DNA from: Haliotis cracherodii
Taxonomy: Eukaryota
Direction: 5' to 3'
NCBI RefSeq assembly: GCF_022045235.1
Contig: NW_027266286.1
Location: 19,654,001-19,718,000, forward strand
Length of the DNA: 64,000 nucleotides
The translations under genes and the position numbers were made by a program. The notes beneath the pieces were generated by a model. The model saw only the letters and a list, made by a program, of their open reading frames with translations, was not told the DNA's origin and did not search any database. Below, one piece after another: positions 3,701 through 51,913 of the stretch. The first letter of the stretch is position 1; every line of letters begins with the position of its first letter.

Positions 3701-6700
3701 CCCGTTCCACAAAGCAATCTCAGTGCTAAGTTGGTCGTAACTCCCATACTTTATCATATGGTTACGATCAATGTGGCACTAAGATCGCTCTGTGGAACGC
3801 GGCACAGGCTGGTAAATTCAAGGCCTTTCTCAGCCTTTGGGACCTTTGTTAAAGACTGATGCATGCTTGATTCAGACACTGTGTGCTGTATAGGCACGAA
3901 TGCACAACAGATGAAATGTCAACAGTGCAATCTGTGCTTTCTTGGTTCATAAGTACCAAGTTTGTTATAATTTTGCAATTTTATTTTACCATTTTGCGTG
4001 TAGCCATTGCTTTAGCCAGCTGTATCCTCTGACAGATCTGTCTTTCGTCGTTCTCATCAATTATCTCTTCCTGCAGGAGCTCCTCGATGACGTCCTCCAG
4101 CGTAATGATCCCCATGACCTGCAACATGGGGGAGGACATCTGGGTACCATTGTACAAAGCAGTCTTAGCGCCAACTTAGAGTTAACTCCCATACCTTAAC
4201 ATAGACTTACGACAGTCATAGGGCTAAAGTTGTTTGGTACCACGTCACCCAGGTCACCAGCAAAACTTCATCTAATCAGGTGGGTTACATGAACCGGACA
4301 TTATTCTATGCTCTTGGGGTTCAATGACATGCCATCTTGTTGATTCTGGGTAACAATCTACAGTCAAGTCCTGTTTATCCAACATGGGGGCGCACGGATG
4401 GCCCAGTCTTCTAAGGCGATGCAATTCGCTATGCAGAGTTACGTCTCTTTGACACGCCAGAAACCAATGACTGTGGTTTTGTCCCGATAATGTTTCTAGT
4501 TTTGTCAGCACCATACCCGTGCTCGTGGGTTTCACCGAAGTGGTAAACGTCTAAGACCTGCATCACTTCGGGCTTTCCTCCCACATTAAGCTGACACACT
4601 GTGACATAACTGGAATACTGTTAAAAGTGGCGTTAAACTCAACTCACTCACTCACTCACTAAGCTGACATGGTTGGTTGCATATGATTATCCAACATCCT
4701 TGTTAATTCAACTTTAATGAAACTAAGTAGTATCAACGTTTGAGATTAAAAAAATCGTATGACTACACGATAGATAACAGTACAAACACGTTGCAATAAA
4801 AAAATTAACTATGTTCATTGTTGGCGCAATGTGTTTTCTAATCATGCAACCTCTGAAGCTTAACACAAAACAATTGTTATGGACTGTATGAGTGATTCAA
4901 AATACTTCAAAAATCACAATCTGGAATGGAAGTCGCCATTTTGAAATTGGTGCTGCAAAGCTCAAGAAAACTGCTTTGTCTAATGTCGACTTTCTGTTGG
5001 TCGATCATAGTTCACAAAAGGTTGTTCTGACGTGACCTGTATGTTGGATGTCCTCAGCGGTAGCGAGAACTTGTATCTGATTTTAATGGTAACCTAATCA
5101 TGCGATTAATCCTGTTTTTTTATTTAAAGCATTAATTGTTTACTGTTAAGCAAATTTTTTATCTGCAGCCGTTGTAATATGCAGCTACCAGGTGACTTGT
5201 CTCACATCATCGCGGGCAGATGACCATGCACTATGCTGATCACTGTGTCGGATTAATGAATAATTTCAGCAATTTGTTGCAAATTAGGTGTGTCAGAGTC
5301 GGAGTCGGAGTGCGAGACTGTCGGATTAATATGTTTAAATAGCACTGATTTAATCGGTCGGATTAACAAGTGTCGGATAAATGAGACTTGACTGTAGGTC
5401 CCCAGCAAGCTATTCTTGTTGCAACAGGTGACTAAGAACATTTGGTGGTCAGGTCCATTGCATGTAATTACATCTCAAATGTTAGGATTGATGCTTATGA
5501 TGTCAATAGCCCTTTTAGGAGGACATGGGGCATGCAGGAGGACATAGGGCATGAAGGACATAGGGCATGTTGGAGGACATACGGCTTGTCTGAGGACATA
5601 GGGCATGTAGGAGGACAGAGGGCATGTAGGAGGACATAGGGCATGTTGGAGGACATAGGGCATGTAGGAGGACATAGGGTATGTTGGAGGACAGAGGGCA
5701 TGTAGGAGGACATAGGGTAGGCAGGATGACACAAGCAGGACACAGCGGACACACTAACCTCACCAATCTGCTGTGGGCTGTCATGCTGCAGGTCATCTTG
5801 AGACTCTCCCAGTAATGGCGTTATATCATCAGTGTTGTCCTGTAGGCCACGCAGTTGTCTCCCCTGATATGATTTCCGCACTACAGCCAAGTGACCTGAC
5901 AAATGGAAATAGACAATGTTCGAACAGGTCAAATTTGTCTCCTGTATCTTATAACAAAAAATTCACTGAAATATATATTGATAATCATTTTGGAATCTAT
6001 GATAACAGCCTTTCAATACCAATGATCTTAAATTTAAATAAGTGTCCAGTGCTACATATGTGTCTGCTCTATCTAAGGCATTCACAATCAAGCTGATTCC
6101 AAATCCAGTCTGGTAGTTCATACATCATTTTGTTTCTAATCCCACACCATGTCACCTTTGCCAGTCTGGAAGAGATTGATAAGGTCATGCAGTGGTTTGA
6201 CGTCGTCAATAAAAATGACAGGGCGGAAGTATTGCGGATCGAGCAAGAGGCTGCTGACAGGAATAGCATCCTCTGGGTCCAGCTTGATCAAAGTCTTCAT
6301 CAGCAACACAGCTTTGATCTGCGACCGAGACTCCTCGTACACCGGGATGCGGGAGTGTCCATGAAACAAGATCTACAGGAGAAGAGTGAAACAAAAGAGT
6401 GTTCATGAATACAAACATGGAAGTGAAAACATGAGGACGGTCACTGGTCCATGGATGCCCACACAGATGTGAAACAGGACAGTCACTGGTCCATGGATGC
6501 ACACACAGATGTGAAACAGGACAGTCACTGGTCCATGGATGCACACACAGATGTGAAACAGGACAGTCACTGGTCCATGGATGCACACACAGATGTGAAA
6601 CAGGACAGTCACTGGTCCATGGATGCACATACAGATGTGAAACAGGACAGTCACTGGTCCATGGATGCCCACATGGAAGTGAAAACATCAGGACAGTCAC

Positions 6701-9700: not shown

Positions 9701-12700
9701 TCCTTTGCACGTTTATCCTTCAGGTCTAGCGCTCCCTGTTGTTGAGAAAGTAGATATGTTGAATATGACATTATGTTGGACATGTGACAAGAATGTTTTC
9801 ATATCAATAAAACGTGTCAAAGATTGTTATGCTAAGATCACAGACCCCACTCTCTAACATACCTTTGCAATGTCCTCCAACCTACCTTGATCATGAGGAC
9901 TTCATCCGTTGTGAGATGTTCTTCATTTCCGGATCCATCCCCTGGTCCATGCAGGTCCACCAGGACCTTCAGCTCCGCGCGCCTAAAGAACGTGCCGTGA
10001 TTGCTGCCCAGGACACAGTCCAGGAGCTTGGACAGCGGCCAGCTCACGATGAAGAACAGCCCCATCAGGATGTACACTACCCTGGGTGTGACAACATCTA
10101 CACTGTGATTACTCCAGGAGATACAGTGACAGACAGAATATACTGGATAACGCCAGGTTAATATTGTCCTATGCTCAAGGAGATAACAAGATGTAATACA
10201 TGCAGTCTCTACTGGATAACACCAGCTTGATATTGTCCTATTCTCAAGGAGACAACTAGAAGTAATACATGCAGTATCTACTGGATAACACCAAGTTAAT
10301 ACAGTCTTATTCTCAAGGAGATAACTAGATGTAATACATGCAATATGTTCTGGATACCATCAGCTCAATACTGTCCTATGCTCAAGGAGATAACTAGATG
10401 TAATACATGCAATATGTACTGGATAACACCAGCTTGATATTATCCTATGCTCAAGGAGACAACTAGAGGTAATACATGCAGTATCTACTGGATAACACCA
10501 AGTTAATACTGTCCTATTCTCAAGAAGATACAGTAGATGTAGTACATGCAGTATTTACTGGATAACACCAGGTTGATATCATCCTATGCTCAAGGAGATA
10601 ACTAGATGTAATACATGCAATATGTACTGGATAACATCAGCTTAATATTGTCCTATGTTCAAGGAATTACAATAGATGTAATGAATGCAGTATTTACTGG
10701 ATAACACCAGGTTAATACTGTCCTATGCTCAAGGGGATACAATGGATGTAAAACATGCAGTATATACTGGATAACACCAGGTTAATATTGTCCTATGCTC
10801 AAGGAATTACAATAGAAGTAATGCATGCAGTATATACTGGATAACACCAGGTTAATACTGTCCTATGCTCAAGGTGATATAGTGGACATCCCATACTCAC
10901 GGGGCAAGAGTTGAGCCAATCGCCAACCCGAACCTCGTACACAGGGCCTGGGGCACAACTCTGAAACACATGTACAGACTTGTGGCAGACTTAAAAAAAC
11001 TCTAAACAAAAATATCACAGTGATATAAAAAGTCCTAGAAATGGGACATATATATACACACTTGATTTTACACCTACCCATATATGATGATCTGATAATG
11101 GAGGGTGACAAAGGACCTGGATTTTATTTTATAAATCTGTTCGAAATTCTTTTTAATAGTTTTGAAGCACTGATTGAAAAGATACTTTGTCTCTAAAACA
11201 AAAGCCTCAGCTCCCGAATCCCCACCAGAAAGAATATGCAATTGTTGGTCCTGAGCAGTAAGGTAAAGACACCAGAAGCAGCAATTTTAGTGATGCAAAA
11301 CTTGTCTTGGAGATTACACAGTTCCAGTCAGCTGTCAATGTAATGAAGAAGCTTTTTTGATATTGACACAGTGAGTGAGTGAGTGAGTTGGGTTTTAATG
11401 CCGCTTTTAACAGTATTCCAGTTATATCGCGGCATATCAGCTTAATTTGGGAGGAAAGCCCGAAGTGATGCAGGTCTCAGACGTTTACCACTTCGGTGAA
11501 ACCCACGAGCACGGGTATGGTGCTGACAAACCTAGAAACATAATCGGGGAGAACCGGGATTCGAACCCACAATCATAGGTTTCTGGCGTGCCCAAGGGAC
11601 GCAACTCTGCACAGTGAATCGTGGCGCCTTAGACAACTGGGCCACCCGTGCCCCCGATATTGACACAGGCTGACAGCTTTGGGTCATATATGTTGGGCTA
11701 AAAAAATACTAGTCTTGGTTCTCAGGCACCGCCGGTATCATCATAAAGTCTGCTGCATGTTTTGTTTTTATTTCCATTTTAATTTTTTTCATAAAAATCC
11801 TTATATTCAAAAATAATGCCATCTATCATAGCACGCAGTTACTTCCTTTTACATGTGCACTGCTTTACTGCGCATCTGCTGTATGGTAATGTGGCTATAG
11901 GATTTGCATGCTTGTTGATGTAGGGAGGCCCTTGCCCATGTGGATGGTACACAACTGTTTATTTGGGGACATACTAGTTTCAACAAGCAAAAAAAGGAAA
12001 ACCAACGCCCACCCACCCACATACACTATATTTTCAAAAGCCATTGCCTCAGAACCAATTCTAATATTTTTGTAAGCCTTACTGACACATAATTTATGAC
12101 CTTCCCACAATCTAAACATGGGTCCATCTAAATACTTCATGTTCTAAACATGACCATCCTGCCAGGTGGCTCCAACACAGATACTCTACACACTATCAGA
12201 ACTCACTCGCCAAAGATGAGGACAGCTGAGACCGAGACAGAAATTGCGATGATCGGGTCTGAGATCCGGTCTAAAAAGATGGGCATGGCTTCAACGGCAG
12301 CAGCATTAGCCAGGAGCAGCGTCACCAGTAGTAGATGATGTCGTTTGACAAGGGGCAGTATCCTTCGAGCATATTTCTGTTCCCTAGTCGTGCCCCCGTC
12401 CTTCAGGATGTTGAGGGTCATAAGGTCAAGTGACAGCAGGCCCATTGTCAATCCGGACATCAGGCCTGAATACAGAGGTCATTATACAAACTGAAAGTTG
12501 GTTGGTTGGTTGGTTTGTTGATTAACGCTGCACTCAGCAATATTCCAGCTATATGACGGCCGTCTGTAAATAATCGAGACTGGACCAGACAATCCAGTGA
12601 TTAATATCATGAGCATCCATCCACGTGTTGGCACTGATAGAATATAATTCAGGGGATAATTGAGCCTGGACGAGACAATCCAGTAAAAGATATCATGAGC

Positions 12701-22525: not shown

Positions 22526-22709
22526 NNNNNNNNNNNNNNNNNNNNNNNNNNNNNNNNNNNNNNNNNNNNNNNNNNNNNNNNNNNNNNNNNNNNNNNNNNN
22601 NNNNNNNNNNNNNNNNNNNNNNNNNNNNNNNNNNNNNNNNNNNNNNNNNNNNNNNNNNNNNNNNNNNNNNNNNNNNNNNNNNNNNNNNNNNNNNNNNNNN
22701 NNNNNNNNN
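22526..22709. other. Assembly gap (184 N)
   Basis: Run of N. Confidence 1.
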
Positions 22710-22937
22710 TTTAACGCCGCATTTAACAGTATTCCAGTTATATTTATGTCAGCTTTTATGAAAGCCCGAAGTGATGCAGGTCTCAGACGTTTACAACTTC
22801 GGTGAAACCCACGAGCACGGGTATGGTGCTGACAAACCTAGACACATAATCGGGGCGAACTGGGATTCGAACCCACAATCATAGGTATTTGGCGTACCCC
22901 AGGGACGCAACACTACACAGCGAATCGCGGCGCCCAA

Positions 22938-28690: not shown

Positions 28691-29813
28691 CTCGGGCTGC
28701 TCAAGTAGGTTAAACTGAACTTCATTACTAACAGGCAATACTATTGCATGATACACAAATATGTCCCTTTCAGGATAGTGATATCGAAAATCACCGAGAA
28801 TCCTACTACTAAATTACGGAATTTGCCCATACTTCTTATTGAGTAATAGTTATTCAAATGGAAGCCCTGGGCTTAAACGTAAAACATGCAATGATCTTAA
28901 AAATACACATGGCACCGAATTTGACATCAACAGTTTAATACAACAGTCGGAAAAAAACGCTGCACAGCTAGATCTGTTGGATGGGAATGACCTACCATGC
29001 CGTTATTATTCACATTCTCAACACAGTGTCTCTCGTCTTAAATTACCACACCGCGTTTTCTTTGCATACCCGAGTGTGGCTTGTAAATTTGAAAGCCTTC
29101 AACAACACTCATTGGGAGTTTGTGGCTGGCTAAGATGAGCCAGGCATTTATATGGTTTTACAAGGTTTCATGCATACACTGTATCTGTCGTGTTTTTGAG
29201 CATTTGAGACCCATTATATAAAGCATCAAAGGCTTAAATGAATGATTTCACGTTATGGGATTTAACAAGTTGTTAACACTTACTGAGTCTGAAGTCGTTT
29301 TCCAGGGTTAAGATCTAGAGAAGTGTGCTGATATCAAGTCAGCACACATAGGAACTGGCAGGGGCAAATCAAGATCGGGATCATAGGATCTTTTCACGAT
29401 ATGGGGACAAGTAACTTAATTATCAGAAGTAATGAAGAAGCAAGGTGTATAGTCATAAGAGATAAACAAGCTGCAAACATGTAAACGTTTAATTTAAGCA
29501 AATTGACAACTCCCGACTTATATCTACAGCAAGTACAAAACAGATGCATGTAAACGTTACATATCGAGGATCTACTGTAACACAATAATTCAATCAACTC
29601 AAACAGGACACTCTAAAGACATTTATTTTATTTGGAATGAAATGTCAATAACACTTTTGATGTAACTTCCGCTTTGTACAAGGCAAGTAGTTGATAATAT
29701 AAATGTTATAACTAAATACATTAGTTAAGATACACGCAAATGTTCTGACAGACACAATGACTCTTGTGTTGGTCAGTTTTAACTTTAAGATCTCTTCATG
29801 ATTCATAACAATC

Positions 29814-31150
29814 TCATTCATTGCACACTCTTACAGTTACACACCTGAGCGCCCGGCACATGTGACACTTGCGCAGTGCAGATGCGCAGCCTATGCACGA
29901 GACAGGATGGGCACAGGGTAGAAATAGAACACATCACAAGACTAACATTACATGAAGCTAAAAAGCAACTCGTGATTGTTGTTGAGGGTATGTTTTGAAT
30001 TTCTAAATTACTTCATAAATTTGTTGTAAAGTCAAACTACACTTAAGTACTTGGGACTGTATTTTCAATTGTATTTATTGCTGATATACGACTCTTGATG
30101 CCAAATATGTGAATATTGATAAACACTTATGTATGACCTCTATGTGTTGCAAGCTTTTGTTATGAGAAAGTTATCCCGAATATGACTCAAAATAAATAAT
30201 CAATATTCACCAGGGCTCGATTTAGCAACATAAAACATACACCAGTGGGACCTATCATTGAAAAGTGCAAACTAATATTTATTTCTACAAGGACTAAATG
30301 CATGTAAAAAATAATATGTGTGTCTTGACTAGCCTTTAATTGTCCACACAACATCGACCTTTGAACACACTTATTACATCTCAGCTTGATTTACCATACT
30401 ACATCACTAACCCCTATGTTATGTGTAATTTGTCATTCCTCTTGGGATTGACGTCATCACACTGTTAGTATTTCAAGATTATATAACCTGTACTGTAGCT
30501 TCACCTGTCACTGAAATGACCTCGGTATCACGTTATGATATTAAGGTTATCCAACTAATGATAATCATTTTGCATTATATGGTGGACATTGATGACATTG
30601 CCACATAAGTATTGTAACAGTAAGTACTAACTGTAATAAAGATCAATGACACAGTCATCAGAGGTCTGAGATTGTATTTATTTATATATATTTAAGTGAG
30701 TGAGTGAGTATGGTTTTACGCCGCTTTTAGCAATATTCCGGACACCGTAAAATGGGCTTCTCACATTGTACCCATGTGTGGAATCGAACCCACGTTTTCG
30801 GCTATACGATCCAACGCTTTAACCACTAGGATACCCTATCGCCCAGATATATTTAAGGGAACAGGATGCAACCTGGTTTTGTCTGGGGCGTCCCGAAAAG
30901 GTGCATCTTCTAAAATAAGTAATGCTGTTTTATAATAAATATGATCTGTCATCTCTGTCATTCGATAAACAAACAATCAATTCGTTTTGACCTAAAAGGA
31001 GTGCGTATAAAACTGTTATCCTGACCATCAGAGTGTTGTATCAATCATTTATCATTCAATCTGCTTCTGTGATATCATAAAAAAAACCGTTATGAACATC
31101 AACCACAGGGCTTTGCAAGAGCACTTACTCAATACTGCTTGTTCTAGCAT
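29814..31150 (-). pseudogene. Pseudogene copy of the RING-only mini-IAP
   Basis: The ATG exon is retained (31150-31129, MLEQAVL|gtaagt). The RING exon keeps only 29933-29814 (CVLFLPCAHPVSCIGCASALRKCHMCRALRCVTVRVCNE*); its acceptor and first CxxC are deleted. Confidence 0.8.
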
Positions 31151-32477
31151 GGTGGCCTTCCGTCCACTGATCGTGGGACTCTCAACACACTTGCCACTAG
31201 CAGACTGTGAATGAATATTACACCAAGTACTATCGTGTCTATATTCACTGTTTCATCATGGTATTAAATTAGAGATAGTTGTAATGAAAATGGTTTTTAA
31301 GCTTTGAAGAGTTATGAATAAAATCAGAGTTATAAAATAAACGTAACAATTTTGGACTTTCTTGGAAGATAGAAGCTTGGAAAATTGTCATGACAAACAG
31401 ATCACTACATCTAAGTCGTTAAAGCGTCAACAATGTTTTTTTCCGGTTTTTTTCTCATACGAAAAGGGATCTGGGATCTTTTATGACAAAAAAGCACGAG
31501 TGACATATGTATTAAAGTATCAGAATACGTGAATGGTTTATTTCATCCTACTATTAATTGGAAAGATGTTTCATACGAGAGAAAATGTACAAAGGACGGT
31601 AAGCTGTTCGAATTTCAAGATAAATTCATTTTCAGAACAATCTAAAGAAAGAATTACTTAGTCGGTGATATTTCTGCAATCTGGAAATGCTGTAGAGAAG
31701 AGTTATCACGTATCTATTGTTGATGTGAACACGTCAGGGAGTTTGGTTACAGGTTGAAACATTTATCAATAGTAATCTAAATATCAAACTAGAATTCACA
31801 AAATACACTGTCATGTTTGGATTTTGTACATACAACCATGCAGTTAACCATATTCAGATATTTGTCAAATACACTGCAAACAAAAACAATATAATCCATT
31901 GTTATCGCAAGAAATGGAAGCAACCAACTACAACCCTCTGTTCATTATCATGATAATATCCACGTTTAAGTCTAATTCAGGCAACTTCAAGCGTTGTATA
32001 CAGGCCCTACATGACTACTCTTATTATGTATTCTACCTTGGTTGTAAATGTAATTATTTGAAATGCAATACAATTTATTCCCAAAATTGAATATGTCCAA
32101 CATTACTTGCTCAGTTCTGTTTGCATCCGAATCGAGATTAATCAACATTTCGTATGCCGCACGGGGAAATAAGTTGTCTGGTACATGAAGCTGTTAGTTT
32201 GTATTTAATGCATTTCACCGAACTGTATATAACCAATAGGTATCGTCCACATTGTGAATAGTCATATCAGTACCAAGTTACAAGAAGAGGTAAGAAACCT
32301 CTTTTATGACAACTTCTTTATAACTTTTATGACAACTTCTTTATAACGACTATTTTTTGCACCTACATGAGTTGAATGTAAAGAGACAAGAAGTAGCCCT
32401 GTGGTATCATTAGAAAGAAGAACATGTTATCCATAAAATGTTTTATATCCTCTCAGTCTTCATAGTCACAGAGACAG

Positions 32478-46302: not shown

Positions 46303-48822
46303 CTACTACGATGGTTATCTTTTTTAGAATCTGTTTGAGCTTATTGTCACCAGTAATACTGAGTTTGTTTACAGATAATTACAGGCAAGTCTCAATATGT
46401 ATTTAACTGTGGTTAAATATCTCATGCTGGGATACTGAATTTCAAGCTAGTCTTATTTTGTGATTTTAATGAAGTCACATATTTTAAAAAATAACACACC
46501 TCAAGAAATCAATGGTTAAATATAACATTTGGTTGTGTTTAACCAGCAAGCAGGATTAGCGAGACGAACAATATGTAGGGTTATCTCCCTTTAGTTGTTG
46601 TGTTGGCCCTGTGCTTGATCGTGTGCAGCATGAACACATTTGCCGTCCTCTCTCTCTGTCTCTCTCTCGCTGTGTGGCTAAATATTAACAACACACACAC
46701 TGAGTGGAATCTCGCGTCTCATGTCACGTGACCGCCGTGTTGTTATTATTCAGAGGACAATCTGCAAGCGGAGCTACTTACACGAGCCCTCACTTTACTA
46801 GGGCAGAGGGATAGCCTAGTGGTTTTAAGGGTTTGATTTCCCACATGGGTACAACGTGTGAAGCCTTTTTATGGGGACCCGTGCCGTGATATTGCTAAAA
46901 GCAGTGTAAAACCCACACATTCACTTACCTCTCTAACATGGGAGGCACAAATGGTTCAGTGGTGTAAAGCGTCGATATACGCTGTTCGTCTCTGTAATGG
47001 GTTTGAATCCAGGATTCGTGACGATTATGACCCTTGGTCCGTCAGCACCATATCCATAAGGAACAATTCTTAATAATTTTATCAACAGTTATCCAGAAAC
47101 AATTGCCAATATCTGTTATCATATATACAATTGAAATATATTCCTTGTATGTAAAACATAACCATTGTTTTGCTCAATTACCATATTATTTCCATATCAT
47201 TATATTACATTTGTTTGAAATGAAATTGTCATAATGTGTCTTTGTATATGTACCTGTGTGTTTTGTACTAACTGTGCGTATATTTGTAGTTTGTAGAATA
47301 TTGCAACTGTTTCCCGATGGAATGATACTCAATAAATATCTTATCTTTTCTTGTACCTGTTCGTTGGCTTCACAAAAGGGGTTAACGTATATGACGTGTG
47401 TCGCTTGTCTCAGCTCTTGCATTAACCTGACAAAAGGTGATACAACATTACTGTTCAAAACTCACTCACTCACTCAACTTGTGAAAGGTATGGAGTAAGT
47501 GATAGCTTGGTGCATATCAATGATAGAAATGTTGGTAGACTAATATGCGCACACACGCACGCACACACATACACACGTGTGTGCAAGCATAAATCTATTC
47601 TTGGTTGCTGTTCACTGCAGATTTATGTCCTGATATGCCAACACCACACGTATGTATGGTGGAAAACCCCTTCTTTATATAGTAATTAATGGAAATACCC
47701 AGCGTATATATATATATCCAAGCGAGGAAGCGTTCCAAAGTAGGTCAACACCGAGAGAGGTATAAACGCGGAAGCCACACGCTCGCTCGCTGGAGTCCCA
47801 AGGTTGGGTAGGTTATCTCTATACGTCTTTAGTTAAACTGAAGTTCATCACTAACATGCAATATTATTATATGATATACAAACACATGATTTAAATCACG
47901 TCTGTCCCTTTCTGAATAGTGATGTCAACAGTCACCGAGAATCTGAGACTGCTGCTACTTAAATACGTGATTTATATCCATTCTGCTTATTGAGTATTCA
48001 AATGTAAGATCCTTATTATTCACATTCGATACAGCATGTCTGACGTGGTAACTTATCACAACGCGTTTTCTGCGCCTGCCCGAGGTGACGGGTGTGGCTT
48101 GTAAACTTGGAAGCCTCCAGCAGCAGTGTTGACTTTGCTGAATTGGCCACACGTTTATATGTCTTTAAGTTTTTATACATTTTCTGTATATGACCACCTA
48201 AAGTTAAAAATAAAATTAAAGCCAATCAGCTTTGTATTTCGTGTTTATTGCCCACAGTTTAAAACATCGAATTCGAATTTAGGGTGTGGGGTTGAACAAG
48301 TTAACACGTTTTGGTTCTGTGGTCGTTTTTATAGATGTGTTGAATGTAAGTATAATTATGCACACTTAGGAACTGGCAGTGGCAAATCCAGATGCGGAAA
48401 AAAGGATTTGTTCAAAATGTAGGGACAAAAATACTCAATTATCAGAAGTAATGAATAAGCAAGATGAATTGCAACAGGAGACACAATAGCTGTAAATATG
48501 TAATCGAGGTATTAATTTAAGCAAATTGATAATTACCGACTTATATCTATAGTAAGTGCCATAAATAAAGGCATGCACACGTTAAATATTAAAGATCTAC
48601 TGTTACACGATAATTCAATCAAATGCAAACAGGACACTCTGAAGACGTATATTTTATTTTGAATTAAAAAACAAATACGCTTTGTACACGAATTGTAGTT
48701 AATAATATTAATGTTGTAACTAAATACTTTAGTTAAAAGATACACGCAAATGTTCTTAAAGGCACAATGTCTTTGTAGCTCAATTTTAATTATGAGACCT
48801 CTTCATGATTCACAACACAATC

Positions 48823-49381
48823 TCATTCATTGTACACTCTCACAGTACCACGGATGAGCGCCCGGCACACGTGACACTTGCGCAGTGCAGGTGCGCAGTC
48901 CATGCACGTGACAAGATGGGCACACGGTAGAAACAGAACACAACTGGTCTTGTCCAGACAGACCTTGCATAGACCTTCATCCCTTAACGCGCGGTTCTCC
49001 TCTACGAGCTGGCGTTGTGGGGAGGGTGGTGGTGTACTGAGGGATTCCTGGGCTGGAGGAAAGAGGAGAAATACTCACTTGTCATGTCAGATAATATGGC
49101 AATGTGTCTTGCTTTATTTGATTCGAGGTGGAATACTAAGCACTACGTCGTAAAACGTTACAAAATTACTATAACGAAAAATCAACCACTTTACCTCTTG
49201 TTTTTGTTGAGATGTGATATGAATAAACTCTCCATATTTACTGTATATTTATCAGACAAAACTACACGTTGGCCATCTTGACTGTAAATAACATTTATTT
49301 TGTATATGTGTATATTGCCGATATTATAGTGTTGTTGGATATTACATGAATCATTTTAAAACAAGGATGCATGACCTCTCT

Positions 49382-49452
<71 letters not shown>

Positions 49453-49898
49453 GGTCTTTTTTAGCCAGCGCGTTCGATTTGATAAAGTCATCCTAAAATC
49501 ATATACTGCGAGAATATAAAATATTAATAAAATATTCTTTGAGACGAGGCTACTCATATCAGCACAATCACCTTGAACAGACACATTTTCAGGTTTTGTA
49601 ATACTTCTTTTGTCTGAAATTCAGGGGGATATCAATTATAGTGCAACTCATCTGGAAGGTAAATCAAATGTCACACAACCACATATTTAACAAAATCGTT
49701 TAAAATAAGTTAAGCCGTTTTGTAACGAATATGATCAGTCCTCTCCATTATTCGATAAACAAATAGTCAATTCGTTCAGATATAACAGGAGTGTATAAAA
49801 CTCTTATTATATCTGCTTATATGTAATGATGATAAACGTCATGTATCAATCACAGGGGTATTGTGATAGCACCTACCGATTACTGCTTGTTCTGGCAT
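48823..49898 (-). CDS. RING-only IAP-derived E3 ligase, 83 aa (alternatively a second terminal exon of the IAP gene)
   Basis: Exons 49898-49877 (accATG CCA GAA CAA GCA GTA ATC G|gtaggt; exon acceptor at 49978-49977) and 49052-48823 (cctctttcctccag|). Protein [83 protein letters not shown]. All C3HC4 ligands are intact. Confidence 0.72.
49383..49449. repeat. (GT)n microsatellite
   Basis: Seen directly. Confidence 0.98.
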
Positions 49899-50539
49899 GG
49901 TCACTTTCCTTCCACTGGTCGTGTATGGCACCAAGGCGACACGACACTGTCTCACAACACACTTGCCGCTTCCAGACTGAGGGTGGCTAATACCCAGTAC
50001 TAATGCGTGTGTATTCAGTTATTTGAGTGTGTGGAAAACCCAACTATAAATAGACGTGTCGACATGAGTTGAACAGGGGTTGAATATGAATGTCCTTATC
50101 TGCCCATCATGATCTGGCAAATAGCCGGTGCATGTCGTTGCTAGTGACATGCTGCCTCTATGCGGTGCCTGCAGATGATTGGTTGGTTGGTTGGTTGGTA
50201 GGTTGGTTGGTCATGGGCTTGGTATTTTCTATGTCTGTCAGTGTCTTGTGTCCCTGTACGGAAGGACTAGTTGTAATTTCTTCCCATCAAAGATGAAGTT
50301 AGCGTGTCTCATCCCGTGTTATTCCTTCATCACAATTAAACACCGCACAGTCCAATCATTCATGTTTACGTCAAGTCTGTTATATCAGTAACAAGGATAC
50401 ACGCATATTGCATTTTTCCGTCATAGAATGTCTGAGACACCTTGCTCTAAGATGGTTCAGCTGCAAACTTAAGGCCTCGATGTTTACTCGTTTTGCTTTT
50501 TATACACAAGTGTCAGGGTTGAACATAAACTTTGACACA

Positions 50540-51360
50540 ACTAAGGCGATATGGATTGGATTGGAAATATTGTAATATTCAATTATATCAAGAATATGTA
50601 TTACACTGCCATCTTGGAACTTATGAGGTTCCAGGAACTCTCCTAAATGACCAACTGGAGAATGTGTGGGTTATCGACGCAAGGAAAAGAATTCAGACAA
50701 TTTTCAATATTTCGGAAAACTGGAGAAAAAGAAAGTTTGCATTAACAGGTAAAATAACGGTTGTGAAAACATCATCACTATCAACTAAAATACATATTTC
50801 CTTAGCCTTTCCTTCACTTCCTAAAACATTTCTTGATGATCATATAAACTTGATATGGAATGTAATTAGACATTTAGTAAGGTAAATATAAAGGCTAAGA
50901 AATTCACTAAAAATTTAGCTAGAATTAAGTATGGTAGATATATATATGATTATGCATTTACTAAATGTAACTATTAAATGATATTTTTGTAAACATAATA
51001 TTACTAATCCAAGTAATCTACCAATCAAAGAAACTAATGCCCCTTTTTCGAAGGATGCTTTTGCTACTTGGAAAAGAAATAAATCTCATTATACAGCTGA
51101 TCAATCAGATTTAGAAATAATATTACTTGAACCACTATGGTATAAACATTTTATAGACTCACACTTTATTATTCCAAACTGGTTCAGTAGAGGCATTCAC
51201 ACAAAAATCTTTGCAATTCGGAAGGCATTTTGTCCTACGAATTAAGGTTAAAGATAATTTTAAGGAAACTTTTCAGGAAGATGATAAAGTTAAGAATATT
51301 CCTAAAACACGGAGGGATACTGTCAACTGTGTCATTTCTATAAATCAGATTATAGAATAC
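50540..51360 (+). mobile_element. Degenerate non-LTR retrotransposon (L1/Tx1-like) ORF2 fragment
   Basis: WRKRKFALTGKITVVKTSSLS resembles the post-RT W..R.LSL.GKI..IK motif; ILLEPLWY follows downstream. Many stops. Confidence 0.6.
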
Positions 51361-51913
51361 ACAAGGTGTTAATGAATATGAGTAAGCCTTCAAAGGATGT
51401 TATATGTTTTAGGCCCAGTCGTCTAAGGCCGCGATTCGCTGTGCAGAAACCTATGATTGTGGGTTCGAATCCCGGTTCGCCCTAATTATGTTTCTGGGTT
51501 TGTCAGCACCATACCCGTGGGTTTCACTGAAGCAGTAAACGTCTGAGACCTGCATTACTTCGGGCTTTCCTCCCACATTAAGCTAACACGTCGCGATATG
51601 ACTGGAATACTGTTAAAAGCCGTGTTAAACCCAACTCACTTTAAATCCTTTTGTTTGCAGTTAATAGGACAATATGTCTAATGGTGTAGTTCCGTGGAAT
51701 TCTACATTAACTGATTACAGAATATGTACACTACAGGCTAGGTTACTGGTTTTTCAGTGTGGATTATGACAAGAAAGAGCAACCATAAGGATGCTGAAAT
51801 GTATTAAAAAACTTAAAACAACAACAAGACACTGAACCTGTGTGACTGTGATATAACCGTCGTCCCTATGTTGAGTGCGTTGCTGTTATGTGAAACAAGA
51901 TACGACGTCCAAC

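What the first reader, a model, noticed from the sequence alone, without database searches (positions are those of the whole stretch)
48823..49976. Hidden 83-aa RING-only mini-IAP missed by the ORF track
Seen: a duplicate of the IAP terminal exon with the same 230-nt length and phase, intact zinc ligands, the pre-RING dimerisation helix ([11 protein letters not shown]) and the aromatic residue at -3. A 100-nt upstream exon supplies an in-frame accATG, and this exon is also conserved in the 31129-31205 copy. Established: IAP RINGs act as dimers and can drive RING-RING-dependent degradation of other IAPs. Inference: a BIR-less RING could heterodimerise with the adjacent IAP and degrade or inhibit it. 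The CPxC>CHxC change lies near the E2-binding surface and may alter activity.
Basis: partly seen in the sequence, partly recalled or inferred. Interest (0 to 1): 0.75.

Follow-up and report, generated by a model that had tools for sequence, protein, structure and literature searches.

The report
Expressed RING-only IAP paralogue in abalone
Next to a normal apoptosis-inhibitor (IAP) gene, black abalone has a small, spliced, conserved gene for only the ubiquitin-ligase RING tail of an IAP; public annotation already lists it, but its function is untested.

Summary
Exon 49052-48823 (-) is an intact IAP-type RING exon (PF13920, E 5e-13). It has the same 230-nt length and phase as the neighbouring IAP's last exon.

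So public annotation did not miss it. H. rufescens has an 83-aa orthologue and H. rubra an 82-aa one.

The predicted junction 49877/49052 occurs in assembled contigs of 2 of the 4 runs laid (X1, X2). Coverage there is limited to exons. The proposed upstream exon ending at 51838 has no coverage in any of the 4 runs.

Selection looks purifying:
- dN/dS against the IAP RING is about 0.1.
- 5 of 5 listed coding differences between runs are synonymous.
- The sister copy at about 31200-29817 has decayed.

Every residue named as catalytic in cIAP1 is kept or conservatively replaced. CPxC>CHxC is specific to this clade.

Heterodimerising with, or degrading, the neighbouring IAP is plausible but untested. 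Short RING-only "IAP" models are also annotated in oyster, mussel and scallop. This is a real gene of moderate interest, not a new discovery.

The parts
48823..49052 (-). Terminal coding exon. It holds 2 bases, 75 codons and a TGA. It encodes the linker, the pre-RING helix, the IAP-type RING and the C-terminal tail (residues 8-83 of the 83-aa protein).
   Evidence: open frame, AG acceptor. (PF13920, E 5e-13). (contigs in 4 of 4 runs laid cover it). (identical to XP_071115058.1).
49053..49876 (-). Intron of 824 nt, GT..AG on the minus strand. It contains a (CA)n microsatellite at about 49385-49453.
   Evidence: table 5: joint 49052/49877 'skips 824, CT..AC' in X1 (depth 126, side 92) and X2 (depth 433.6, side 99). 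Intron contigs have a lower depth figure than the exon contigs in X2 and X3.
49877..49976 (-). Upstream exon. It holds at least 78 nt of 5'UTR, then an ATG at 49898-49896 and the first 7 codons plus 1 base. Its true 5' boundary is unsettled: one contig reads through to 49993.
   Evidence: X2 is covered to about 49975, X1 to 49968, and X3 record 19 spans 49877-49993; conserved in the decayed copy.
48243..48822 (-). 3'UTR. AATAAA lies at 48249-48244 (distal) and at 48658-48653 (possible proximal site).
   Evidence: sequence. table 8: X1 record 1 spans 48251-49052, and X6 records 25 and 26 span 48243-48603 and 48662-48850. Contigs cannot fix RNA ends.
29817..31205 (-). Decayed sister copy of the mini-gene unit. 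The RING exon is reduced to its 3' half (29933-29817): the first zinc pair and the acceptor are lost and the tail Tyr is now Cys. The upstream-exon homologue lies at about 31205-31129 and has a 24-nt deletion.
   Evidence: 8 non-synonymous and 1 synonymous change assigned to this lineage, against 1 and 1 for the intact copy.
54832..55061 (-). Terminal RING exon of the neighbouring full IAP. It is the closest paralogue (73% amino-acid, 72% nucleotide identity) and the likely parent of the mini-gene's RING exon.
   Evidence: The full IAP's exons were mapped with P0011 at 59465-58608, 57752-57567, 56475-56248, 55623-55321 and 55065-54835. BIR zinc motifs lie at 59006-58923 and 57728-57645.

Best explanation
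This is an independent, transcribed and spliced protein-coding gene. It is conserved in Haliotis and encodes an 83-aa protein that is only the C-terminal module of an IAP: a short Pro-rich linker, the pre-RING helix, an IAP-type C3HC4 RING and the C-terminal tail. It has no BIR domain.

Origin (inferred from the sequence). The last exon of an IAP of this cluster was duplicated. The closest extant IAP is the neighbour at 59.5-54.8 kb. The copy was joined to a new upstream exon that supplies the start codon. That unit was later duplicated again, and the second copy decayed.

Mechanism (inferred, not shown). The protein keeps every element that dimeric IAP RINGs use to dimerise and to activate E2~ubiquitin, so it most likely acts as a RING dimer. 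It has no substrate-binding domain of its own. Its most likely partners are therefore other IAP RINGs, with which it would form heterodimers that change their ubiquitin-ligase output or stability. This would be a BIR-independent modulator of the expanded IAP repertoire.

Shown here: the gene model, the splice, conservation, purifying selection and the fold. Inferred: dimerisation, the partner and the effect on IAPs.

The confidence given is for the whole statement. For the part 'a real, expressed, conserved coding gene' alone I would say about 0.85. For the part 'acts through heterodimers with IAP RINGs' alone I would say about 0.35.
For: Gene model. The product is identical to XP_071115058.1. 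H. rufescens has an 83-aa orthologue with 1 difference. H. rubra has an 82-aa orthologue listed under three accessions (XP_046545620-22, named isoforms X1 and X3).

Expression.
- The joint 49052/49877 has GT..AG ends on the minus strand in X1 and X2.
- All 4 runs cover the RING exon and exon 2.
- The same runs have zero depth in bins 47900-48099, 51100-51299 and 51700-52299. This exon-only pattern serves as an internal control for the runs being RNA.
- The depth figures of the exon-2 contigs are close to those of the RING-exon contigs: X3 92.2 against 110.8, X6 481.3 against 552.5. The tool warns that these depths are rough.

Constraint.
- NG86 dN/dS against the IAP RING exon is 0.092 over all 75 codons and 0.093 over the RING.
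- 5 of 5 substitutions listed inside the CDS are synonymous, and X2 has an in-frame 3-nt deletion in the linker.
- Between the H. cracherodii and H. rubra proteins the RING and tail differ at 4 of 48 positions, while the linker is heavily changed.
- The sister copy accumulated 8 non-synonymous changes against 1.

Fold and catalytic residues.
- Best solved matches by sequence are the cIAP1 and cIAP2 RINGs, E 8e-21.
- The AF2 model has a helix at 19-33 and a RING with pLDDT above 90. It superposes on 6HPR and 3EB5 at 1.0-1.3 A.
- The cIAP1 residues named as functional in PMC6349121 section 8 are V573, M575, H588, I604, C605, R606, R614 and F616. They align with V38, L40, H53, V69, C70, R71, R79 and Y81. 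That paper states that a tail Phe or Tyr works in trans across the dimer.

Dimerisation. A review states that the RING enables homo- and heterodimerisation of cIAP1, cIAP2 and XIAP and so regulates their stability (PMC3901146, passages).
Against: - No protein-level evidence exists, and no dimerisation or E3 assay.
- The runs are only guessed to be RNA, and Logan contigs cannot give levels or ends.
- The junction is seen in 2 of the 4 runs. In X3 and X6 the RING-exon contig stops at 49053, which is compatible with more than one upstream context.
- The 5' end is unresolved.
- The pre-RING helix is poorly conserved in the H. rubra orthologue (VQETTGLQDE against [11 protein letters not shown]). 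This weakens the idea that the helix is an essential interface.
- His68 replaces the Pro found in 116 of 163 related RING motifs and could weaken E2 binding.
- Co-expression with the neighbouring IAP was not examined.
Confidence: 0.5

Rival explanations
1. The protein is an autonomous small E3. The RING-only protein forms homodimers and works on its own, through auto-ubiquitination, free-chain synthesis, or substrates recruited through the linker or an adaptor. It has no functional link to full-length IAPs.
For: All catalytic and tail residues are retained. Isolated cIAP1 RING constructs are active in discharge assays in vitro (PMC6349121, section 8 and methods passages). The linker and helix diverge between species, as expected if no fixed IAP partner constrains them.
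Against: There is no recognisable substrate-binding element in 83 aa; Pfam finds only PF13920. The gene lies in an IAP cluster, and its tail (9 of 11) and helix (10 of 12) are almost identical to the neighbour's in this species.
Confidence: 0.2
2. The protein is a catalytically weakened decoy. His68 (CPxC>CHxC) and Ala52 (CGH>CAH) impair E2 recruitment. The protein would then poison IAP RING dimers as a dominant negative rather than ubiquitinate them.
For: His at this position occurs in 3 of 163 motifs, and all three are the Haliotis mini-proteins. It is fixed in both species groups and also in the decayed copy. That the CPxC Pro lies on the E2-binding face of RINGs is recalled general knowledge, not tested here.
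Against: The position is not invariant: Ala 28, Cys 5, Leu 4 and Val 3 of 163. The residues explicitly named as E2 and ubiquitin contacts in cIAP1 are conserved. A heterodimer would still receive a functional tail Tyr and linchpin Arg.
Confidence: 0.12
3. The RING exon is an alternative last exon of the full IAP. Exon 49052-48823 would be joined to the IAP's penultimate exon (donor near 55326-55321), giving a full-length IAP with a variant RING. The two-exon form would be a minor by-product.
For: The phase and length are the same as the IAP's own last exon, so the frame would be kept. Contigs in X3 and X6 stop exactly at 49053, which suggests a branch in the assembly graph.
Against: - The junction to exon 2 is directly seen in 2 runs, and the exon-2 depth figure is about 83-87% of the RING-exon figure in the other two.
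- RefSeq models in three species give the short protein.
- Exon 2, with its ATG and both splice sites, is conserved even in the old duplicate.
- There is almost no coverage between 50100 and 52300.
- The junction was not directly testable, because the 55326 donor lay outside the 6,000 letters laid.
Confidence: 0.08
4. The locus is a transcribed relic. It would be a partial gene duplicate that is transcribed and spliced but not translated or not functional.
For: It arose by partial duplication. Its sister copy is a pseudogene. One H. rubra paralogue (P0003) has a broken RING. Many short RING-only database proteins are gene-calling artefacts on short contigs: 8 of the 10 looked up lie on contigs under 2 kb.
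Against: dN/dS is about 0.1. Only synonymous differences are listed. The indel is in frame. The ORF is intact in three species, with the RING far better conserved than the linker.
Confidence: 0.08

Closest known systems
RING domains of human cIAP1/cIAP2 (BIRC2/BIRC3; PDB 6HPR, 3EB5/3EB6), XIAP and BIRC7
   Same: - Best sequence matches among solved structures, E 8e-21, aligned over residues 23-81.
- Best structural matches, rmsd 1.0-1.3 A.
- Same eight zinc ligands, pre-RING helix, linchpin Arg, E2-contact Val and trans-acting tail aromatic residue.
   Different: In those proteins the RING is the C-terminal domain of a multi-domain protein with 1-3 BIRs, with or without UBA and CARD. Here it is the whole protein. 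His replaces Pro in CPxC, and Ala replaces Gly in CGH.
The neighbouring Haliotis 2-BIR + RING IAP (window 59465-54832, minus strand)
   Same: - Closest paralogue: 73% amino-acid identity over 73 residues.
- Same exon length and phase.
- EENRALRDE and LIRGTVR are identical.
   Different: - It has two BIR domains and a middle region; the mini-gene has none.
- Synonymous divergence is saturated (dS about 1.5-2.4), so the split is old.
- The mini-gene has its own 5' exon with no similarity to the IAP gene.
Annotated short RING-only 'IAP-like' models in other molluscs (P0194 Crassostrea gigas 87 aa; P0199 Mytilus galloprovincialis 152 aa; P0218 Pecten maximus isoform X3 194 aa)
   Same: PF13920 is the only Pfam family precomputed for each. 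They carry IAP-derived names or similarity, and the RING sits at the C-terminus.
   Different: - They are independent sequences (54-62% identity) with CPxC.
- Two of them keep a longer upstream region, whose start is 'MGY…' in one.
- None was checked here for expression or conservation, and some may be partial models.
Non-catalytic or partner RINGs that work by heterodimerisation (MDMX with MDM2)
   Same: The concept is the same: a RING whose tail acts in trans in a dimer. PMC6349121 names MDM2-MDMX among the tail-dependent dimers.
   Different: There is no sequence relationship beyond the RING fold. MDMX is a large protein with a p53-binding domain. The analogy is functional only and untested.

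Membership tests
IAP family (BIR-containing proteins) | At least one BIR domain (PF00653; C-x2-C-x16-H-x6-C) | tested here: not met
   Pfam finds only PF13920 in the RING exon and nothing in exon 2. The 83-aa protein has no BIR motif. The nearest BIR exons belong to the neighbour, which has its own RING and stop. Published surveys prune BIR-less proteins (PMC8917759, passage).
IAP-type RING, Pfam PF13920 (zf-C3HC4_3) | Score above the curated cut-off, with all eight zinc ligands | tested here: met
   49.1 bits against a cut-off of 27. C36, C39, C51, H53, C57, C60, C67 and C70 are present.
Dimeric, tail-activated RING E3 (cIAP1/cIAP2/BIRC7/XIAP type) | Helix preceding the RING, and a C-terminal tail with Phe or Tyr at -3 | tested here: met
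   The model has helix 19-33. Y81 aligns with cIAP1 F616.
Dimeric, tail-activated RING E3 (cIAP1/cIAP2/BIRC7/XIAP type) | Linchpin Arg after the last Cys, and a hydrophobic E2-contact residue in C-x-[V/I]-C | tested here: met
   R71 and V38. Arg holds the linchpin position in 151 of 163 related motifs, and V or I the contact position in 157 of 163.
Dimeric, tail-activated RING E3 (cIAP1/cIAP2/BIRC7/XIAP type) | Pro in the last C-P-x-C pair | tested here: not met
   His68. Pro occurs in 116 of 163 motifs and His in 3 of 163, all of them Haliotis mini-proteins.
Dimeric, tail-activated RING E3 (cIAP1/cIAP2/BIRC7/XIAP type) | Actual dimerisation and E2~Ub discharge activity | not testable with these tools
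   This needs biochemistry. Only a monomer model was made.
Expressed protein-coding gene | Spliced transcript with the predicted junction | tested here: met
   The joint 49052/49877 occurs in X1 and X2, that is 2 of the 4 runs laid. The runs are only guessed to be RNA, but coverage is limited to exons.
Expressed protein-coding gene | Orthologues with an intact ORF, and purifying selection | tested here: met
   Depth is zero in bins 51700-52099 in 4 of 4 runs. The tool notes that a hole proves nothing, and X2's contig carries about 30 unplaced letters upstream of exon 2.

The most novel reading that the evidence does not exclude
Abalone, and perhaps other molluscs with expanded IAP families, may keep a dedicated BIR-less RING-only IAP paralogue as an endogenous regulator. 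It would act on full-length IAPs purely through RING-RING heterodimerisation. By doing so it would tune or trigger their ubiquitination and turnover. This would be a route of IAP control that does not use the IBM-BIR interaction of Smac- or Reaper-type antagonists. The clade-specific His68 would tune its E2 use.
Probability: 0.25. Interest if true: 0.65.

Novelty: new member of a known kind. Interest (0 to 1): 0.35.

Why it matters
IAP surveys define the family by the BIR domain and discard BIR-less relatives. This is stated in PMC8917759 (passage), and a BIR is likewise the inclusion criterion in PMC7768685. RING-only derivatives of IAPs therefore fall outside the published catalogues, although annotation pipelines do predict them.

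This locus is a well-supported example. It is spliced, conserved across three abalone species, under purifying selection, and retains all catalytic residues. If such proteins pair with full-length IAPs, they add a regulatory layer to cell-death control in animals with very large IAP repertoires. They would also be a simple natural tool for probing RING-dimer specificity.

If they do not, this is an ordinary small RING E3 born from a partial duplication.

Tried and rejected
- Genome-wide test of whether RING exons lack an upstream BIR. The BIR search of the genome was saturated: 150 of 549 candidates were scored, and about 100 were near-identical dispersed single-BIR frames. It could not be paired with the 51 RING hits, so I dropped it.

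- Short RING-only proteins elsewhere. Among the best 150 hits, I looked up 10 short ones. Of these, 8 lie on contigs under 2 kb and have odd hydrophobic N-termini. They are probably last exons called as whole genes, so I did not count them as RING-only genes. The profile search (355 hits at E<=1e-8 among 4421 candidates, 120 listed) gave a few named models on chromosome-scale contigs. I report these only as annotated models.

- Gene conversion between the mini-gene and the IAP as an explanation for the identical EENRALRDE. Third-position identity per 9-codon window is 0.22-0.67, with only short identical patches. No clear tract was found, so I did not pursue it.

- Pseudogene reading: rejected.

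- My first RING regular expression had the wrong spacing and found almost nothing. It was corrected.

- dN/dS on the linker alone failed because synonymous sites are saturated. YN00 failed on several pairs.

- Papers.
  - Cheung 2008 (PMC2441678) and Silke 2005 (PMC1283416) are not held. I saw them only as reference-list entries, and what I say of them is recalled.
  - For PMC8917759, PMC13159474, PMC7768685 and PMC3901146 I saw passages only.
  - For PMC6349121 I saw passages and the whole of section 8.
  - For PMC7831173 and PMC7893105 I saw only the search listing.
  - A search for 'RING-only' + 'inhibitor of apoptosis' + 'BIR' found 0 papers. This covers the held library only.
  - No supplementary files were opened. 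The supplementary tables of the IAP surveys could list Haliotis or BIR-less sequences that I did not see.

- The joined (spliced) protein was never built by me. Exons were searched separately. The joined form was used only as P0001, the database protein returned.
Full report
WHAT IS THERE

The window is G000:C23:19654001-19718000 of a 1.18-Gb, 80-contig assembly. The proteins it encodes are named in public records as Haliotis cracherodii, the black abalone.

On the minus strand, an AG at 49054-49053 is followed by an exon that is open from 49050 to a TGA at 48825-48823. Its translation matches Pfam PF13920, the IAP-type C3HC4 RING, at 49.1 bits against a cut-off of 27, E 5e-13.

A tblastn of this exon against the window finds three copies:
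- itself;
- the last exon of a full IAP at 55056-54838, at 73% identity over 73 residues;
- a half-length relic at 29933-29817.

The full IAP was mapped with a 588-aa homologue, P0011. Its exons lie at 59465-58608, 57752-57567, 56475-56248, 55623-55321 and 55065-54835. BIR zinc motifs lie at 59006-58923 and 57728-57645. Its last exon, 55061-54832, has the same 230-nt length and phase as 49052-48823.

The upstream exon 49976-49877 has an AG in front and a GT behind. It carries gaccATGc, with the ATG at 49898-49896.

The exon-wise search returned P0001, 83 aa. P0001 begins with the seven residues encoded after that ATG and continues with the RING exon. It is the RefSeq protein XP_071115058.1, "putative inhibitor of apoptosis [Haliotis cracherodii]".

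IS IT A GENE OR A FRAGMENT?

Orthologues.
- H. rufescens has XP_046370909.1, 83 aa, with one difference in the linker.
- H. rubra has an 82-aa protein listed under three accessions (XP_046545620-22, named isoforms X1 and X3).
- H. rubra also has a second locus whose RING is broken (P0003), and a frameshifted isoform (P0004).

Between the H. cracherodii and H. rubra proteins, the RING plus tail differs at 4 of 48 positions. The 35 residues before it are heavily changed.

Expression. The look-up of sequencing runs listed 24 runs, none on record as RNA. Eighteen were guessed to be RNA. I laid 4 of them (X1, X2, X3, X6, four coded organisms) on 47900-53899.
- All four cover the RING exon and exon 2.
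- All four have zero depth in bins 47900-48099, 51100-51299 and 51700-52299.
- Intron contigs have a far lower depth figure than the exon contigs in X2 (30.7 and 55.2 against 433.6) and X3 (5.09 against 110.8), and there are none in X1 and X6.
- A joint from 49052 to 49877, skipping 824 bases with CT..AC ends (GT..AG on the minus strand), is present in one contig each of X1 (depth 126, 92 letters beyond the joint) and X2 (depth 433.6, 99 letters).

Exon-only coverage together with a clean canonical intron removal is what RNA gives. The silent bins act as the internal control the tool asks for.

In X3 and X6 the RING-exon contig stops at 49053, so the junction is not shown there. The depth figures of their exon-2 contigs (92.2 and 481.3) are close to those of the RING-exon contigs (110.8 and 552.5). 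These are rough figures, as the tool warns.

The 3'UTR is covered down to 48243-48251. AATAAA lies at 48249-48244, and a possible proximal signal lies at 48658-48653.

Selection.
- Against the IAP's RING exon, NG86 gives dN 0.221, dS 2.40 and omega 0.092 over 75 codons. Over the RING alone omega is 0.093. dS is saturated, so the duplication is old.
- The five substitutions listed inside the CDS among the four runs are all synonymous. They change Ile, Lys and Leu codons and two positions of one Arg codon. X2 carries an in-frame 3-nt deletion in the Pro-rich linker.
- That table shows only the best-supported rows, and 112 more are hidden. X6's contig has 14 differences, of which I could classify 3.

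The sister copy. 47832-50017 is co-linear with 28709-31247 at 67-79% nucleotide identity. These are the only two copies of the unit in the genome. The sister copy:
- keeps exon 2's acceptor, ATG and donor, with a 24-nt deletion;
- has lost the first half of the RING exon;
- has Cys in place of the tail Tyr.

Polarised with the IAP exon, 8 non-synonymous and 1 synonymous change fall on its lineage, against 1 and 1 on the intact copy. The sister copy also has CHMC, so the Pro-to-His change predates that duplication.

WHAT DOES NOT HOLD

- X2's contig carries about 30 further letters upstream of exon 2 that were not placed in the stretch.
- X3's contig runs through the 49976 acceptor to 49993 and then has 27 letters that do not fit.

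The 5' end is therefore unresolved. There may be more than one, which the several H. rubra accessions for one protein may also reflect.

The alternative-last-exon junction 55326/49052 could not be tested. The two sites are 6,275 bases apart and the stretch is limited to 6,000.

WHAT IT PROBABLY DOES

By sequence, the best solved relatives are the RING domains of human cIAP1 (6HPR, E 8e-21) and cIAP2 (3EB5/3EB6). XIAP and BIRC7 follow, and then MYLIP and MUL1.

An AlphaFold2 model built from an 18-row alignment gives a disordered N-terminus, a helix at 19-33 and a RING with pLDDT above 90. Its mean pLDDT is 77.9, while the other four models scored 51-58. It superposes on 6HPR and 3EB5 at 1.0-1.3 A over 61 columns.

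Section 8 of PMC6349121 names the functional residues of the cIAP1 RING:
- V573 and M575 contact the E2.
- H588, I604 and C605 contact the donor ubiquitin.
- R606 is the linchpin.
- R614 and F616 lie in the tail and act in trans from the other protomer. F616H is inactive, and other dimeric RINGs use Phe or Tyr there.

In the alignment these residues correspond to V38, L40, H53, V69, C70, R71, R79 and Y81. The numbering offset is my inference from the construct description. It places all eight named residues on the right letters of the 6HPR chain.

The module therefore looks catalytically competent and built to dimerise. It has no other domain. A review states that the RING mediates homo- and heterodimerisation of cIAP1, cIAP2 and XIAP and regulates their stability (PMC3901146, passage). 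The primary papers were not available to me.

I infer that the protein acts as a RING dimer. With no substrate-binding part of its own, its most likely partners are full-length IAPs. The genome has at least 51 IAP-type RING exons, many of them in this cluster.

Whether it promotes their degradation, activates them or blocks them is open. Two observations cut against a simple story:
- The pre-RING helix is poorly conserved in H. rubra.
- His68 replaces a Pro found in 116 of 163 related motifs. His occurs only in the three Haliotis mini-proteins, while Ala, Cys, Leu and Val also occur.

HOW NEW IS IT?

It is not a member of the IAP family as defined, because it has no BIR domain. It is an IAP-derived RING E3.

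The gene model is public. A profile search for short relatives found further annotated RING-only models on large contigs:
- Crassostrea gigas, 87 aa;
- Mytilus galloprovincialis, 152 aa;
- Pecten maximus isoform X3, 194 aa.

Most of the unnamed short hits I looked up are likely artefacts of gene calling on tiny contigs.

The IAP surveys I could read select on the BIR domain. A search for "RING-only" together with "inhibitor of apoptosis" and "BIR" found no paper in the held library. The class therefore seems unstudied rather than unknown.

VERDICT

- Observation: confirmed.
- Interpretation: partly supported. The gene and the splice hold, the first exon does not, and the function is untested.
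- Interest: moderate to low.

Noticed in passing
whole genome G000: A BIR (PF00653) search gave 549 first-look candidates. Among the 150 scored, about 100 are dispersed over most contigs, with near-identical scores (82.1-82.4 bits) and open frames of about 140 or 170-173 aa. This looks like a multi-copy mobile-element-borne single-BIR gene. Earlier notes of this scan call such genes Polinton-borne (s1-823394, s1-826549). I did not test that.
   Followed up: no
window 51922-51963 and 51938-51944, minus strand: GGGAATTCCC (51963-51954), TATATAA (51944-51938) and GGGGATTCCCC (51932-51922) lie upstream of a GT donor at 51837-51836. This looks like a well-formed promoter, but no contig from any of the 4 runs lies on 51700-52099.
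   Followed up: partly
window 51444-51640, 52426-52698, 53774-53899: High-copy repeats, with further copies at 11382-11585, 4458-4648 and 22710-22886. Summed contig depths reach 10^5 in all four runs, and there are many chimeric joints. They are probably an abundant transcribed short interspersed element.
   Followed up: no
window 49385-49453: A (CA)n microsatellite inside the mini-gene's intron. Contigs break there.
   Followed up: no
P0004 (H. rubra, XP_046545623.1): An annotated isoform X4 of the H. rubra mini-gene. It is identical up to the middle of the RING and then continues in another frame, so it would lack the last zinc site and the tail.
   Followed up: no
P0006 (1095 aa), P0007 (525 aa): The two best representatives each carry two IAP-type RINGs in one predicted protein. 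P0006 looks like two IAP units in tandem. They are either fused gene models or multi-RING IAPs of the kind reported for aphids (PMC7768685, passage).
   Followed up: no
window 22526-22709: A run of 184 N (assembly gap or masked). It was located only and left alone.
   Followed up: no
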